64,000 nt of DNA from Diadema antillarum (taxonomy: Eukaryota), in the NCBI RefSeq assembly GCF_040938485.1, contig NW_027271306.1, positions 310,001-374,000 of the forward strand. Direction: 5' to 3'. The translations under genes and the position numbers were made by a program. This document shows, in pieces, positions 26,320 through 51,380 of the stretch; position 1 is the stretch's first letter, and every line of letters begins with the position of its first letter. A model generated the notes under the pieces. That model made no database searches, was not told the origin of the DNA, and saw nothing but the letters and a program-made list of their open reading frames with translations.

Positions 26320-28252
26320 TTAGTGGTCTTGCTTCGGTGGGATACCTTCCACCACCTCTGCGGCCCCTGCGGCCCCTTCGTGAAATGCTGAGGACGAAGG
26401 ACCGGCTGTTTCCCCTCCAATCGCAATAGTGGAGTGACCCTCTGCCGCATCTGCCCTGTAAGGTGGAGGGGCCTCTGATAGGTTGACGGTGAGTCCCCCC
26501 GGATGCTCAACTGGCCTGGGCCCAACATCACCATCTCCTTGGAAACCAGGATTCCCGGATGCTACCACGTTCAGGACGATGGCGTTTGGACTTGGTTCCA
26601 CTCCGTTCGCCAGGGCGTGTTGGAGTCGCTCCCGCATCTGCCGCTTCTTGTTGGCCTCCTTAACGATAAGAGTCATTTGAACGAGGTCCGTCAGCCAACC
26701 GACTCCAAACACACCCAGCGTGCAGAGGAAGAGAATTCCGCGTGACTTGTTGTACAGGTAGAAGTGGTGAAGTCCGAACAATCCCAGGGGGATGGCAAGA
26801 AGATACGCGTCCGAAGTGACGTAAGGGTCTTCGCCGACTCGGACCCCCTTCTTCATGAGTTTTACGTCTGTGTTCGCCTTTTCAACCATGTACGACAGAC
26901 GGAATAAATCGACTATCCACCCGACACCGAAGAATCCCAGAGTACACGCATGGAAAATGCCATAGCGAGTCCTTCCAAGGTAAAAATGGTGGAGGCCTGT
27001 AGAAAATAAGCAGAAAGAGTGATATGGAGAGAGAATAAACCCTCTATGTCATAACCGTTTATAAAGGTAACAACGTCTACAGAAATTAAGAATACATACA
27101 TTAATTGATACTTCGAGTTTACTGCCTTCTTCTGTAAGCTAATTAGTTTGATCTTGGTCTAATCCTTTCCTTGTTTGGTTTGCTTGAGACCTACCCTTAG
27201 ACACTTCATGGGAAGTAAAACTTTCCAGATGTCGACATAGAGGGAGGGGAGATAAATCCCATGGTCCCAATGATACTCTTTCGTGTCATTAGCTGCCGCA
27301 CAACATGGGAAGAAATCGACATCTCTTAACAGAAAACCAACCAATATTCGTGAAATTGCCAAATTATAGTTTATAAGAGCTTTTTACATTAATTCCACAT
27401 TATTTTCACCAATTCTTTGTCAAAATATCTAAGCATTCATTATTACATAATATCATTTGAGTAGTCGTTTTTCATTTTTTCATTATGGAAATATGTTTCT
27501 TTTTTTAAGTTAAGAAAACACAAACAAAATGATAATCAGATTTGTGTGTGTGTGTGTGTGAGTGTGTGTATGAGGTAGTACTATAGAAAATGCTATCGTA
27601 ACGTCATTGCTTTACACGTTAACATAAGTCAATATAATTATCCACATCAATTACATTCATCTCCTTTTCATATTGAGCATACGTACTTAGCACGTCATTG
27701 CCCATGAGACGAATGATAACCAATAACAGTAAACGATGCAGAAGTCTCCTACTAGTATACTGTAACCATCACTTCATAGCTATGAAATCGAGAAAGAAAG
27801 GGCGGCATGAAGTAATTACCAAAAAGGCCAGACGGAGGAAGCCAGAGAATGAGCGCATCACTGAACTGCTTGGGAGACAGGTACCCCGGATACTTCTTGC
27901 TGTGTATCCAGTGACCTCTACCACGTGCTTCAGAGATGTGCTCGTTGCACTGCTTCACTAGCTTGCCTATCCGGAACCAGTCGATCAGCCAGCCCAGGAA
28001 GAAGAGCCCGAAGGTGCAGAGGTACACCCTGCCGAAGAACCGCCTCCTCAAGTAGAAGTGGTGCAGACCGAATAGACCCAGGATCGGGTAGCAGAGGACC
28101 CGCGCCACGCTCTTAGACTTGTCCTTCATGGTCGTACATGGAGTGAGGTAGACCTCGTCGGTGTACTGCGGCATGGTACCCCTCTCCCGCTCCTCATGTC
28201 GCTGAAACTCCCGCCTAGCAGCGTCCACGTCGGCCGAAACGACTTGAGCCAT
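26320..28252 (-). CDS. Triple-TM2-domain membrane protein with PPxY tail, paralog A (369 aa); exons 28252-27820, 26996-26320
   Basis: Three GL(F)GLHHFYL...TLG.FG.GW..D repeats; TTTG|GTAAT donor and CTACAG|GC acceptor; 433+677 nt in frame; EAPPPY motif. Confidence 0.88.
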
Positions 28253-29102
28253 GGTTAGGGATAAAACTCTGATATATCGTGCAATCTGGTTCCAGGCTGG
28301 AGCACAAGCACACTCACGCAGCACCTACTGCCAGAAGAAAACTGCTCTTGTCATTCTGTAGGCGGCGCAGCAGAACTTTGTTTTGATCTGCAATCATTTA
28401 CGCGTGCAGGTGTTGGCCCAGGCTACCGTACCACAGAACCAACAAAGCTACAGATAGCACAAGTGTGAAGCAACTTTACTGCTGTAGCACCCTGTCATGC
28501 GTGTACGCCTTAAATCTATACCTCATTCCTGACTTTAGAAAATGACATCAATCCTACGTGCGCTGACGGCGAGGGGCGTGTAATGATCTGGTCGAGCTCT
28601 TATAGGGGGCAATGGTCCACATCTGGCCAATTATTAACCCATGGTTAGATAAATGCTTTGCACGCTCATAGCTATATATACCCGGGTCCTGTGCATGGCT
28701 GTGTATTACATTGATTAGTTTTAAAGATTTTCACTCGTGACAAAGTCAGGTTGGAGAAAAAATGGTGCTTTAATTGCAAAAGGCGAATGAGAAAGTGTTT
28801 TTGTAACTGATAAATTATAACAATTGTGACTAAATTCTTTTAATTGCTCCATGCTTATGTTTAACACAGAGCCGAAATTGACTATTACAGTGTTATCATC
28901 TGCGATATCAGCATTTTATCACGTATCAGTGGTTCTTCGTCATTCTTACTATAATGCTTTTATATGCTATAATTATGTTATATGGTGTGTTTCCTGGGTC
29001 ATCAAATTGTAGCAATTTACATAAAACGAAAATTATATGTTATTGACAACAAAGATAGTCGCTGGACATCAAACAATCTTTATATGTCTGTTTTTGGTTA
29101 CT

Positions 29103-48817: not shown

Positions 48818-49507
48818 ATAGATTACATCGTTTACATTTCCACATAAGTCAACTTGTGCATTTCTTATATTGTCCATATCATGAGTATATGAATCATAGG
48901 TTAGTTGACTTAAACGAACAATGCTCAATAAGTCAAAGTAAAATAAAGTAATTTTGGATTGAACTGACCTTCAACACTAACAGATGCATAAATCTGGATC
49001 TTTGACGACTGAGAGCAAGATTATTGCTTTAGAATAATAAATAATTCCTATATTAACATTATGCCATCGAGGACATAGTAGACACATTGATTTTGGGTTC
49101 TTTCAGCAGATACTAGTTTGGATTGTAAGACAAACGAATATCTTACACTACACAAAGATGATTTGCAATCACAGTTCCAACGAATCCTCTTCATAACTGT
49201 AAACATCAGAGAATGTGGAAGAATCTTTGCCAGAAGATGTCTGCCTGAAACCAAAACTGATCACTGCATAGATTAAAAACGACGCGATATAATGTCCTGA
49301 CGATGAGGGCATAAAATCAACCCTTGCAAATCCGCTCATCTTGTATCACCCAATCATGGTTTTACAGGCCGATTGATGAGTGATCATGACATTGTATCAA
49401 TAAGCAGACTGCTCCAGCCATGCTATTTAATGTCAGCGCCAATCATTACATTAACAATGTTTTTGGTCTTCAGACATCACAGTTTTGAGTTTTGAGTTAA
49501 AATCTGC

Positions 49508-51380
49508 CTATGCTACCGCTGGAGGCGGATAATTCGTAGTTGCATATGGTTGCGTTGGAGCTGGAGGAGGCGGTGGCACGGTCTGCATCTCTGAGGCTTG
49601 GGGAGCATACGGTGGCGGTGGTTCGACGCCGTACCTATTCGGCTGGTCATGAGGGGCATTGTTCGTTACCACGATAACAGTGCTTGTCGTTGCGGGCATA
49701 ACCCCCTGCGCGTTGATGACGTACCCAACCCGCTCCTGTAAGTCCAGGTTCTTGTTGGCTTCATTTACGAGCAGGGGCATCTGGAAGAGGTCGGCCAGCC
49801 AGCCCAGCCCGAAGACGCCCAGGGTGAAGAGATACAGAATGCCCCTGCTGTAGTTCCGGAGGTAAAAGTGGTGGAGACCAAAAAGTCCAAGCGGCATGTG
49901 AAGGAGGTAGGCATCGAGGAGGGAGTACCGAGGAGGATCGAGGGCCCCGCCCTGTTTGAGGAGTTTTACCTCCTTGTTCGCCTTCCAAACCAGGAAGGGA
50001 ATGCGGAACAGATCCATGAACCAGCTAAATATATTCAGACCTAGCGTTGCGGTGTAAAACAAGCCATAGCGGACCCGGCCGAGGTAGATATGATGGATGC
50101 CTGAATGCAAAATATTGTTGGAAGAAAGAAAAAAAAAATCACTCAATGAATTAAAGTTACATCGTATTAAGCAGCTGGGTTTCGTTTATCTAAGTGCAGT
50201 TTCATTGTTCGAGAAAAAGAGAACAATCGTACATTATCTTTTAATAACTGTAACATTATCGTTTCTTTTGTCAAGCCTATGAGAGTGTCAAAGGTTTCAT
50301 TTTGTGTATATTCAGAAGAGAGCTGCACAAAGAAAAAAAATGTGAAAGTTGACTGAAAAGACCTTTTCTTCCTTTTTTTTTGCACGTAACACATTTTTTT
50401 GATAAGATATCGAACAAAAATTACAGTAAATACGTCTGCTGAAAGAATGGAGAAGTAAATTCAATCTTGAAATCACTGTCAATCTCGTTTGTTACAAAAA
50501 GAAGACAACAACAGCAAATTTCCTAATTATCAGTTGGATAAGTAAGGAACAAAATAAAACTGCTGAATTTCTAAATGATAAATCATCACCATGACTGAAT
50601 TTACGGGGAAGTTTTCCCAAGTGACTGAATTGTTCTATATCTACTTTCCCTCCCCATCCTTTCTTTATCCTTTCCACTGGGGATTAAGGTTCCCACTGCC
50701 AATTTATGTAGGTTTTCTGTGAAGAAACAATGAAGTGAATCTCGACAACTTCTCAACAGTAATGGGTTTATACCTAACTTTCCCCCTGCTGTTACTGTCA
50801 ACTTACCAAACAGGCCAAAAGGAGGCAACCATAAGAGGTAGGCATCGATAACAGACATCTTTCGGAGTATCCTGGGATACTTGTGGCTGACGAGCCAGTG
50901 GCCCCTCTCCCTCGCCTCCCGTATGACTTCGTTACAGTCTCTGACGAGGAACCATATTCGGAACCAATCGACAACCCAGCCGATACCGAAGATCCCCATC
51001 GTACTGGAGTAGACGAAGCCGAGGAACAGGTTATTCAGGTAGAAGTGATGACAACCAAAGATTCCCAGAGGGGAATACAGGAGGATGGCGGTCAACGCGA
51101 AGGAGCGCTCATTAGGCGGCGAGGGGCCGTGAGGGACCACGGAGACCTGGTCGTTGTCGTAAGTCGGCGCATTTGCTTGCTGCGGTGGCACAATAACCTG
51201 AGGAAACGCCGGGGTTGAAACTTGGTATGCCTGTACCTGCTGTGAGGACGAGCTTGAGGCAGGGGTGGCCCATTGTTGGCTATGACCGGGGTTAGAATAC
51301 GAGGTTGGATGTTGCGAATTGGGCGCTCCGGAAACGGCTTCAGCACCGCTTAGGTCTTGCTTGCCTTCACTAGAAACCAT
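49508..51380 (-). CDS. Triple-TM2-domain membrane protein with PPxY tail, paralog E (388 aa, ~95% identical to D); exons 51380-50807, 50100-49508
   Basis: Same repeats and intron (TTTG|GTAAG, TTCAG|GC); 574+593 nt in frame; 20 aa differences from D by manual comparison. Confidence 0.9.

What the first reader, a model, noticed from the sequence alone, without database searches (positions are those of the whole stretch)
26320..51380. Tandem array of five intact genes for a triple-TM2-repeat membrane protein with PPxY tails: candidate undescribed gene family
Seen: five same-strand two-exon genes (313-406 aa) with the same phase-1 intron in the Gly codon before repeat 2, each with three tandem repeats of [hydrophobic helix-P-x-GL.GLHHFYL-x(8-10)-TLG.FG.GW..D.FR...V..(A/C)N]. 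N-termini are unalignable low-complexity sequence; old (A/B/C) and recent (D/E) paralogs and a remnant coexist. Known: TM2D1-3/almondex have one TM2 domain with a G.DRFYLG motif and act in Notch/gamma-secretase biology. The GLHHFYL variant is closer to the TM2 of DNAJC22/Wurst and of microbial TM2 proteins, but no J-domain is present here. I know of no characterised protein made of three TM2 repeats plus PPxY. Inference: a birth-and-death expanded membrane adaptor, channel or sensor family, possibly immune or stress related, linked to NEDD4-type ubiquitination.
Basis: partly seen in the sequence, partly recalled or inferred. Interest (0 to 1): 0.82.

Follow-up and report, generated by a model that had tools for sequence, protein, structure and literature searches.

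The report
Sea-urchin triple-TM2 membrane gene array
Five neighbouring sea-urchin genes encode membrane proteins built from three TM2 hairpins, four of them with a PPxY tail; they belong to an old, widespread but unstudied family whose relatives carry ubiquitin-ligase parts at the same end, which gives a testable function.

Summary
Five intact, minus-strand, two-exon genes (313-406 aa) lie at 26320-51380 in a Diadema genome. Each encodes three Pfam TM2 repeats, and all share a phase-1 intron in a Gly codon inside repeat 2.

Two corrections:
- Gene B has no PPxY.
- The "remnant" is only the last 12 codons plus 3' flank of gene E, made by a ~2 kb tandem duplication.

The N gap (33138-33276) is intergenic and touches no exon.

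The family is neither sea-urchin-specific nor fast-evolving:
- Proteins with 3-7 TM2 repeats occur in echinoderms, hemichordates, a tunicate, molluscs, a brachiopod, Trichoplax, ctenophores, Capsaspora and other protists. All are labelled "uncharacterized".
- An oyster mRNA has the intron at the identical position.
- dN/dS is 0.14-0.32, and three paralog lineages predate the Diadema-Lytechinus split.

C-tail PPxY is about 7-fold enriched (33/59 against 4.8 expected). Relatives carry a C-terminal RING or UBX instead, and Capsaspora has both PPxY and RING.

Best reading: a polytopic membrane protein with cytosolic tails that recruits Nedd4-type ligases. Topology and binding are untested, no PDB fold matches, and I found no paper on the family. 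The scan already noted and followed up the same kind of array on another piece of this genome (s1-215036), with a similar conclusion.

The parts
26320..28252 (-). Gene A, 369 aa. CDS exons are 28252-27820 and 26996-26320. Three TM2 repeats. PPPY at 26458-26469.
   Evidence: The D. setosum orthologue P0001 is 96.5% identical. dN/dS is 0.14.
29103..30380 (-). Gene B, 313 aa. CDS exons are 30380-29915 and 29578-29103. Three TM2 repeats, a short C tail and no PPxY.
   Evidence: The D. setosum orthologue P0017 is 92% identical. dN/dS is 0.32. B sits on a long branch in the tree.
33138..33276 (.). Assembly gap (N run) in the intergenic space between genes C and B. It is not part of any gene model.
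   Evidence: N runs. Searches found no TM2-like sequence between 30400 and 35190.
35196..37216 (-). Gene C, 406 aa. CDS exons are 37216-36634 and 35833-35196. Three TM2 repeats. Repeat 2 has the variant GFYQFYL. PPAY at 35322-35333.
   Evidence: Identical to D. antillarum P0082 over the columns kept for the tree.
41301..43184 (-). Gene D, 388 aa. CDS exons are 43184-42611 and 41893-41301. Three TM2 repeats. PPPY at 41400-41411.
   Evidence: D and E are 94.8% identical at the protein level, with dS 0.12 and dN/dS 0.21.
44129..46150 (-). Partial duplicate of gene E's 3' end: its last 12 codons (46111-46146) plus about 2 kb of downstream flank.
   Evidence: Self-alignment at ~95% identity and a tblastn hit to the last 12 residues of E. 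The segment is single-copy in D. antillarum locus L004.
49508..51380 (-). Gene E, 388 aa. CDS exons are 51380-50807 and 50100-49508. Three TM2 repeats. PPPY at 49607-49618.
   Evidence: 96.4% identical to D. antillarum P0005.

Best explanation
These are five real, selectively maintained paralogs of an ancient eukaryotic family of tandem-TM2 membrane proteins.

Shown:
- Each protein has three TM2 hairpins, giving six hydrophobic helices.
- The hairpins are rich in small-residue packing motifs, and each carries a conserved His-His, an Asp-x-x-Arg and an Asn.
- The predicted core is compact.
- The N and C tails are low-complexity sequence.

Inferred:
- Both tails and the inter-repeat linkers face the cytosol.
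- The conserved acidic-residue + PPxY motif in the C tail of A, C, D and E binds the WW domains of Nedd4-family HECT ubiquitin ligases.
- The protein therefore acts as a membrane-anchored ligase adaptor or activator, in the manner of NDFIP1/2 or yeast Bsd2, or as a ligase-regulated cargo in endosomal/Golgi sorting.
- The TM2 core supplies the membrane-embedded recognition or working part.
- In Capsaspora, Fabomonas and ctenophores the same core is fused directly to a RING E3 domain. In one relative from an unnamed metagenome it is fused to a UBX domain. In placozoans and bilaterians a PPxY that borrows a HECT ligase is what is found there.
- Gene B, which lost the tail and evolves fastest, would be a ligase-independent or modulating subunit.
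For: Real genes:
- The reading frames are intact and all five share conserved GT-AG phase-1 introns.
- dN/dS is 0.14 (A) and 0.32 (B) against D. setosum, and 0.21 between D and E. The C tail itself is constrained at 0.13-0.27.
- The array is syntenic in D. setosum (B, A, then a GT29 gene) and in D. antillarum (E, D, C). Lytechinus pictus has a tandem pair.
- Three paralog lineages each have a Lytechinus orthologue.
- The intron sits at the identical codon in an oyster gene, where a spliced mRNA contig also proves transcription of that orthologous family member.

Link to ubiquitin:
- 33 of 59 proteins with three or more TM2 repeats have PPxY in the C tail, against 4.8 expected from shuffled tails. 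For N tails it is 1 against 1.6.
- Among 50%-identity representatives the figure is 35 of 78 against 6.6 expected.
- PPxY is kept in all three echinoid lineages and in starfish, brachiopod, molluscs, hemichordate and Trichoplax, usually preceded by an acidic residue.
- A C-terminal RING (PF13920) scores above Pfam's cut-off in P0030, P0165, P0183, P0212 and P0217. The match is weaker in three ctenophore-type proteins. P0181 has a UBX domain.
- Capsaspora P0183 has both PPAY and RING.

Topology and fold:
- RING, UBX and WW ligands all act in the cytosol, and an even number of helices puts both tails on the same side.
- None of the five proteins has a hydrophobic N-terminal signal sequence (inspection of the sequences).
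- The AF2 model of orthologue P0001 has pLDDT above 90 over the core, residues ~35-275.
Against: - No binding, localisation or topology data exist for any member.
- TM2D1-3 proteins are annotated with the opposite orientation: hairpin loop inside, ends outside (PMC8714088). The hairpin loops here are Arg/Lys-rich per residue, so the positive-inside rule is ambiguous.
- Gene B and the sea-urchin 4xTM2 paralogs P0089 and P0090 lack PPxY.
- The tails are Pro-rich and the proteins counted are related, so the enrichment counts are not independent events.
- PPxY also binds non-ligase WW proteins such as YAP, WWOX and Kibra.
- Transcription of these five Diadema genes was not shown. The Logan contig I checked for a sea-urchin relative (L003) is genomic, not cDNA.
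Confidence: 0.55

Rival explanations
1. The triple-TM2 core is itself a channel, transporter or metal/ion sensor. Its conserved intramembrane His-His, Asp and Asn would line a site or pore. PPxY would then only be a turnover signal that lets Nedd4 ligases set the protein's abundance, as with ENaC.
For: - The most conserved positions are polar residues inside or at the ends of the hydrophobic helices: H, H/Y, D, R and N in every repeat.
- The core model is confident and compact.
- The repeat number varies from 2 to 7, as in modular pore-forming repeats.
Against: - No structural similarity to any solved channel or transporter. The best VIA-align Z is 4.5 and Foldseek E is above 2.8.
- RING and UBX fusions are more typical of ligases or adaptors than of channels.
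- I could not inspect model coordinates for a pore or for symmetry.
Confidence: 0.25
2. The tails are luminal or extracellular, as in the topology annotated for TM2D1-3. In that case PPxY is not a WW ligand, and the proteins act like almondex/TM2D in the secretory pathway or at the cell surface.
For: TM2D proteins are annotated with an intracellular hairpin loop and external ends. The short hairpin loops here hold 0-3 Arg/Lys in six residues.
Against: - There is no signal peptide, and the hydrophilic N tails are long (48-98 aa).
- The total Arg/Lys count is 2-9 times higher on the tail and linker side.
- RING and UBX domains sit at the same C-terminal position in relatives and cannot work outside the cytosol.
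- PPxY enrichment is specific to C tails.
Confidence: 0.1
3. The array is transcriptionally silent or decaying DNA, a set of unexpressed duplicates, and the intact frames are fortuitous.
For: No transcript evidence for these five genes was obtainable here. A duplicated 3' fragment lies between D and E.
Against: - There are five intact frames of 313-406 codons with conserved splice sites.
- dN/dS is well below 1.
- Orthologues are conserved across three Diadema genomes and Lytechinus.
Confidence: 0.03
4. The ten exons belong to one or a few longer genes, for example a DNAJC22/Wurst-like gene with a downstream J domain.
For: The repeats resemble the TM2 of DNAJC22 at 41-51% identity.
Against: - DNAJC22 proteins match the window only through their first ~80 residues. 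No J-domain or mid-region match exists anywhere in the 64 kb.
- Every gene has its own ATG and stop.
- NCBI models in D. setosum, D. antillarum and L. pictus are separate two-exon genes of the same lengths.
Confidence: 0.01

Closest known systems
TM2D1, TM2D2 and TM2D3 (biscotti, amaretto and almondex in flies)
   Same: They share the Pfam TM2 hairpin of two hydrophobic helices with a short conserved loop. They are membrane proteins implicated in trafficking and processing of a membrane receptor, Notch (PMC8714088, PMC10684865).
   Different: They have a single TM2, a signal peptide, an extracellular N domain, a DRF loop motif and short C tails. Here there are three TM2 repeats with HH(F)YL, no signal peptide and long tails with PPxY. 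No TM2D protein appeared among the sequence hits.
DNAJC22 / Drosophila Wurst
   Same: It has the closest animal TM2 sequence (GLHHFYLG...GWxxD...AN), 41-51% identical to the repeats. It is also a membrane TM2 protein whose cytosolic C-terminal module recruits cytosolic machinery. From my own knowledge, that module is a J domain acting with Hsc70 and clathrin-mediated endocytosis.
   Different: It has one TM2 followed by other helices and a C-terminal J domain. The genes here have no J domain, three TM2 repeats and a PPxY tail.
NDFIP1/NDFIP2 and yeast Bsd2 (PY-motif membrane adaptors of Nedd4/Rsp5 ligases)
   Same: These are the proposed working analogy. They are small polytopic membrane proteins whose cytosolic PPxY motifs recruit and activate WW-HECT ligases at endosomal and Golgi membranes (established knowledge, not tested here).
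   Different: There is no sequence or domain relationship, since Pfam finds only TM2 here. NDFIP has three helices and its PY motifs are N-terminal.
Capsaspora owczarzaki CAOG_06335 (P0183) and other multi-TM2 + RING proteins
   Same: The same tandem-TM2 core: 4 repeats in Capsaspora and 2-7 in others. Capsaspora also has a C-tail PPAY.
   Different: They carry a C-terminal RING finger, so they are predicted to be E3 ligases themselves. They are likewise uncharacterised.
Bacterial and phage TM2 proteins (YozV type)
   Same: A single or double TM2 hairpin with the same motif. These are the next-best sequence hits, and the only weak fold matches in the viral library cover a single hairpin.
   Different: They are short (about 125-195 aa), have no PPxY or RING context, and their function is unknown.

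Membership tests
Pfam TM2 domain superfamily (PF05154) | A match to the TM2 profile above the curated gathering score (27.9 bits). | tested here: met
   All ten exon translations score 39-74 bits. Three repeats per protein were found with a repeat HMM.
TM2D1-3 / almondex family | A single TM2 domain near the C terminus with a DRF loop motif. | tested here: not met
   There are three TM2 repeats, and the loop-proximal motif is HH(F)YL, not DRF. The family definition is taken from PMC8714088.
TM2D1-3 / almondex family | An N-terminal signal peptide, an extracellular N domain and a short C tail. | tested here: not met
   The N tails are hydrophilic low-complexity sequence with no hydrophobic leader, judged by inspection only with no predictor run. 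The C tails are 41-107 aa.
DNAJC22 / Wurst | A C-terminal DnaJ (J) domain after the membrane region. | tested here: not met
   Pfam finds only TM2. tblastn with four DNAJC22 proteins matches the window only through their residues ~1-80.
Tandem-TM2 proteins with a ubiquitin-system C terminus (unnamed; defined here) | Three or more TM2 repeats in tandem with no other globular domain N-terminal to them. | tested here: met
   Relatives have 3-7 repeats. 236 clusters at 50% identity match the full-length profile at E <= 1e-30.
Tandem-TM2 proteins with a ubiquitin-system C terminus (unnamed; defined here) | A C tail carrying PPxY, or a RING or UBX domain in its place. | tested here: met
   Met for A, C, D and E (PPPY, PPAY, PPPY, PPPY). 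Not met for B.
Tandem-TM2 proteins with a ubiquitin-system C terminus (unnamed; defined here) | A shared phase-1 intron in the Gly codon of GL.G|.HH.YL in repeat 2. | tested here: met
   Found in all five genes, in the D. setosum orthologues and in an oyster gene compared with its mRNA.
Nedd4-family ligase adaptors (functional class, e.g. NDFIP) | Cytosolic PPxY that binds WW domains and directs ubiquitination. | not testable with these tools
   Only the motif, its enrichment and its conservation were shown. Binding and topology need experiments.
Nedd4-family ligase adaptors (functional class, e.g. NDFIP) | Sequence membership of the NDFIP family. | tested here: not met
   No Pfam family other than TM2 is hit. 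The one extra hit, DUF6677, is below its threshold.

The most novel reading that the evidence does not exclude
The tandem-TM2 module is the membrane-embedded substrate-recognition (or ion/lipid-sensing) part of an ancient, so far unrecognised ubiquitin-dependent sorting or quality-control system for membrane proteins. It was originally a RING E3 in its own right, as in Capsaspora, Fabomonas and ctenophores. In placozoans and bilaterians it was rewired to borrow Nedd4-type HECT ligases through PPxY. No member was seen among the named hits from vertebrates, insects or nematodes. Sea urchins hold a five-gene array that diversified the tails.
Probability: 0.3. Interest if true: 0.65.

Novelty: new variant of a known kind. 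Interest (0 to 1): 0.47.

Why it matters
TM2 is a known domain whose molecular function is unknown, even in the Alzheimer- and Notch-linked TM2D genes. This family offers a second, independent handle on it.

The same hairpin is multiplied three to seven times. At one end it is repeatedly joined to ubiquitin-system parts: a PPxY motif, a RING finger or a UBX domain. That points to a concrete and cheap test, namely WW-domain binding and ubiquitin-dependent sorting. It also suggests what TM2 hairpins may do in general.

None of the roughly 45 named hits came from a vertebrate, insect or nematode, which may explain why nobody has studied the family. It is present in tractable species: Lytechinus pictus, oysters, Capsaspora and Mnemiopsis.

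The array itself is an ordinary, old tandem duplication under purifying selection. It is not an immune-type expansion.

Tried and rejected
1. Transcript evidence for sea-urchin members. The Logan contig L003 that encodes P0006 turned out to be genomic, with intron sequence read into the ORF. Only the oyster relative could be shown as spliced mRNA.

2. Fold matches. Foldseek against PDB found nothing at E <= 0.001. VIA-align against 48,161 representative chains gave a best Z of 4.5, all generic helical hairpins. BFVD gave only single-hairpin TM2 proteins at weak E-values. A PDB sequence-profile search gave 0 hits.

3. Pseudo-threefold symmetry or a pore. This could not be examined because model coordinates are not exposed. 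Only pLDDT and secondary structure were available.

4. Repeat-by-repeat orthology between 3x and 4x proteins, to see which repeat was lost. BLOSUM scores are ambiguous except against the S. purpuratus 4xTM2 protein P0315. There, repeats 1 and 2 correspond to its repeats 1 and 2, which hints at loss of its repeat 3. I left this as inconclusive.

5. Other domain fusions in long relatives. Apart from RING and UBX, there was only one Lipase_3 fusion, in Ancoracysta. The rest were low-complexity extensions.

6. Positive-inside rule. The total Arg/Lys count favours cytosolic tails, while the density per residue favours cytosolic loops, so the result is not decisive.

7. A hidden sixth copy or a decayed paralog. 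A low-stringency tblastn found only the 12-codon fragment.

8. Literature. Four full-text searches found nothing on tandem-TM2, PPxY or RING proteins. The two invertebrate-looking mentions I opened both refer to TM2D1/2-type proteins: abalone CG11103, and TM2D1 in an electrotaxis study.

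
Full report
**What is in the window**

The region 26320-51380 holds five genes on the minus strand, each with two coding exons.
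- In each gene, the donor after LWLPP.GL. is G|GTAA and the acceptor is a pyrimidine-rich ...AG|G. The intron is therefore phase 1 and splits a Gly codon.
- The spliced frames are open, with one terminal stop each.
- Pfam TM2 (PF05154) is hit above its gathering score on every exon translation: one repeat in exon 1, and the rest in exon 2.
- An anchored alignment shows three repeats per protein in perfect register, 83 and 74 residues apart in all five genes.
- The intron lies inside repeat 2 (GL.G|.HH.YL), not before it.

**The assembly gap**

The N run at 33138-33276 lies in the 4.8 kb between the stop of C and the start of B. No exon touches it. Neither normal nor low-stringency tblastn finds TM2-like sequence between 30400 and 35190. 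It has no bearing on the gene models, and I did not try to fill it.

**Corrections to the observation**

- PPxY is present in the C tails of A (PPPY), C (PPAY), D and E (PPPY). It is absent from B, whose tail is only 41 residues. The D. setosum orthologue of B lacks it too.
- The "remnant" is not a decayed paralog.
  - It holds the last 12 codons of an E-like gene (46111-46146) plus downstream flank.
  - It is one unit of a ~2 kb tandem duplication, 44129-46150 against 46146-49550, at ~95% identity.
  - The D. antillarum locus has this segment only once.
  - Because 95% is about the allelic divergence seen between the window and that assembly (~97%), an uncollapsed haplotype cannot be excluded.

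**Source and conservation**

- The window is ~97% identical to a Diadema antillarum assembly (locus L004) and ~84-92% identical to D. setosum (locus L001). It therefore comes from a Diadema sea urchin.
- The array is syntenic.
  - D. setosum has B, A and then a sialyltransferase gene, as in the window.
  - D. antillarum has E, D, C.
  - Lytechinus pictus has a tandem pair.
- Nei-Gojobori estimates:

| Comparison | dN/dS | dS |
|---|---|---|
| A vs D. setosum orthologue | 0.14 | 0.13 |
| B vs D. setosum orthologue | 0.32 | 0.11 |
| D vs E | 0.21 | 0.12 |

- The C tails are constrained as well, at 0.13-0.27.
- A maximum-likelihood tree gives a well-supported echinoid 3xTM2 clade (98/99). It holds three lineages, A, B+C and D+E, and each contains a Lytechinus orthologue. 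B sits on a long branch.
- The old paralogs therefore predate the Diadema-Lytechinus split. D/E is a recent duplication, about as old as the divergence from D. setosum. This is an ordinary, stable tandem family, not a rapidly turning-over one.

**The wider family**

- Searches with exon 2 of A and with a 15-protein alignment find proteins with 3-6 TM2 repeats in many groups:
  - sea urchins, a starfish, a brittle star and crinoids;
  - hemichordates and the tunicate Styela;
  - many molluscs and Lingula;
  - Trichoplax and ctenophores;
  - protists.
- A full HMMER scan of 1.84 billion cluster representatives gives 13,447 TM2 proteins at E <= 1e-3. Of these, 236 match the full-length profile at E <= 1e-30.
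- Among the best 150 representatives, three and four repeats dominate.
- Every name attached by a source is "uncharacterized", "hypothetical" or "TM2 domain-containing protein".
- No vertebrate, insect or nematode name appeared among the named hits.
- An oyster member gives direct evidence of expression and of deep common ancestry.
  - A 1,553-nt Logan contig carries the uninterrupted 420-codon frame.
  - It aligns to the genome in four blocks, so three introns have been removed.
  - One of these introns is G|GTAAG...CAG|GT in GLFG|FHHFYL of repeat 2. That is the same codon and phase as in the sea-urchin genes.

**Link to the ubiquitin system**

- Among proteins with at least three repeats and a C tail of 30 or more residues, 33 of 59 have PPxY in the C tail, against 4.8 expected from shuffled tails. 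N tails show no excess (1 against 1.6).
- In the less redundant representative set the count is 35 of 78 against 6.6 expected.
- The motif is usually preceded by an acidic residue and sits near the C terminus. It is retained in all three echinoid lineages: PPPY or PPEY, PPAY or PPVY, and PPPY or PPAY.
- At the same C-terminal position, other members carry different ubiquitin-system modules.
  - A RING finger scores above Pfam's cut-off in Fabomonas P0030, Capsaspora P0183, and P0165, P0212 and P0217.
  - The RING match is weaker (19-20 bits) in Mnemiopsis, in Bolinopsis and in the unnamed P0004 that aligns closely with them.
  - P0181 carries a UBX domain.
- Capsaspora P0183 has both PPAY and RING.
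- Three different ubiquitin-system modules at one end of the same membrane core make a domain-fusion argument for function. They also argue for a cytosolic C terminus.

**Structure**

- An AlphaFold2 model of the D. setosum orthologue of A (96.5% identical), built on a 48-sequence alignment, has mean pLDDT 80 and pTM 0.70. The core, residues ~35-275, is above 90, and the C tail is disordered.
- Within each repeat, the first hydrophobic helix is kinked at its Pro and Gly residues. The second runs on into a long amphipathic helix.
- A short strand in the N tail is predicted to pair with one in linker 1.
- No solved structure resembles the model. Only single-hairpin viral TM2 proteins match weakly.
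- I could not inspect coordinates, so symmetry and pore questions remain open.

**Topology caveat**

TM2D1-3 proteins are annotated with the hairpin loop inside the cell and both ends outside (PMC8714088). For the present family several points favour cytosolic tails:
- there is no signal peptide;
- the hydrophilic N tails are long;
- the total Arg/Lys count is higher on the tail and linker side;
- the RING, UBX and PPxY modules all act in the cytosol.

The short loops are also basic, however, so this is inference and not a result.

**Relation to known families**

- The repeats are 41-51% identical to the single TM2 of DNAJC22. The rest of DNAJC22, including its J domain, matches nothing in the 64 kb.
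- The defining features of TM2D1-3 (a single TM2, the DRF motif, a signal peptide) are not met.
- The functional analogy is to PY-motif ligase adaptors such as NDFIP1/2 and Bsd2, without any sequence relationship.
- Full-text searches found no paper on tandem-TM2 proteins with PPxY or RING.
That is agreement, not independent evidence.

**Verdict**

- The family is genuinely unstudied, but it is ancient and its members are already in the databases as anonymous models.
- The ubiquitin-ligase link is the best-supported functional hypothesis, at about 0.55.
- The immune or birth-and-death idea is not supported.

Noticed in passing
window 18170-18799 and 19927-20211 (+): Two exons of a family-29 sialyltransferase gene (Pfam Glyco_transf_29, 108 and 60 bits) lie next to gene A. 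The same neighbour sits beside the A orthologue in D. setosum.
   Followed up: partly
window 60829-63839 (-): A non-LTR retrotransposon with an endonuclease domain and a reverse transcriptase. Its frame is broken between 61743 and 61785.
   Followed up: partly
window 48376-48829: A ~454-bp stretch just downstream of gene E is missing from the otherwise collinear D. antillarum locus L004, where the alignment jumps from 48826 to 48371. This fits the insertion noted by another first-stage note (s1-217851). ARAGORN finds no tRNA there.
   Followed up: partly
window 44129-46150 vs 46146-49550: A ~2 kb tandem duplication of gene E's 3' flank at ~95% identity is single-copy in L004. The identity is close to allelic divergence, so it could be an uncollapsed haplotype in the assembly.
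   Followed up: partly
P0114 (Lytechinus variegatus XP_041460890.1, 811 aa): This database model has six TM2 anchors and two PPxY tails (PPVY at 385, PPEY at 795). It looks like a fusion of two neighbouring genes, one C-like and one A-like, which would mean the array order is kept in Lytechinus.
   Followed up: no
genes B, C, D, E N tails (DQV.VVP; DEVYLTP in A) and linker 1 (RGHW..S / RGF.LYS): Two short conserved motifs outside the TM2 repeats are predicted by AlphaFold2 to form a small two-stranded sheet (strands 34-38 and 114-118 of P0001). This seems specific to the sea-urchin clade.
   Followed up: no
window 41718-41729 (D) and 49925-49936 (E): D and E have a second PPxY-like motif (PPRY) in the linker before repeat 3. 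The other paralogs lack it.
   Followed up: no
P0181 (metagenomic, 659 aa) and P0243 (Ancoracysta twista, 1059 aa): These are unusual fusions of the tandem-TM2 core: a C-terminal UBX domain in P0181 and a class-3 lipase domain in P0243.
   Followed up: no
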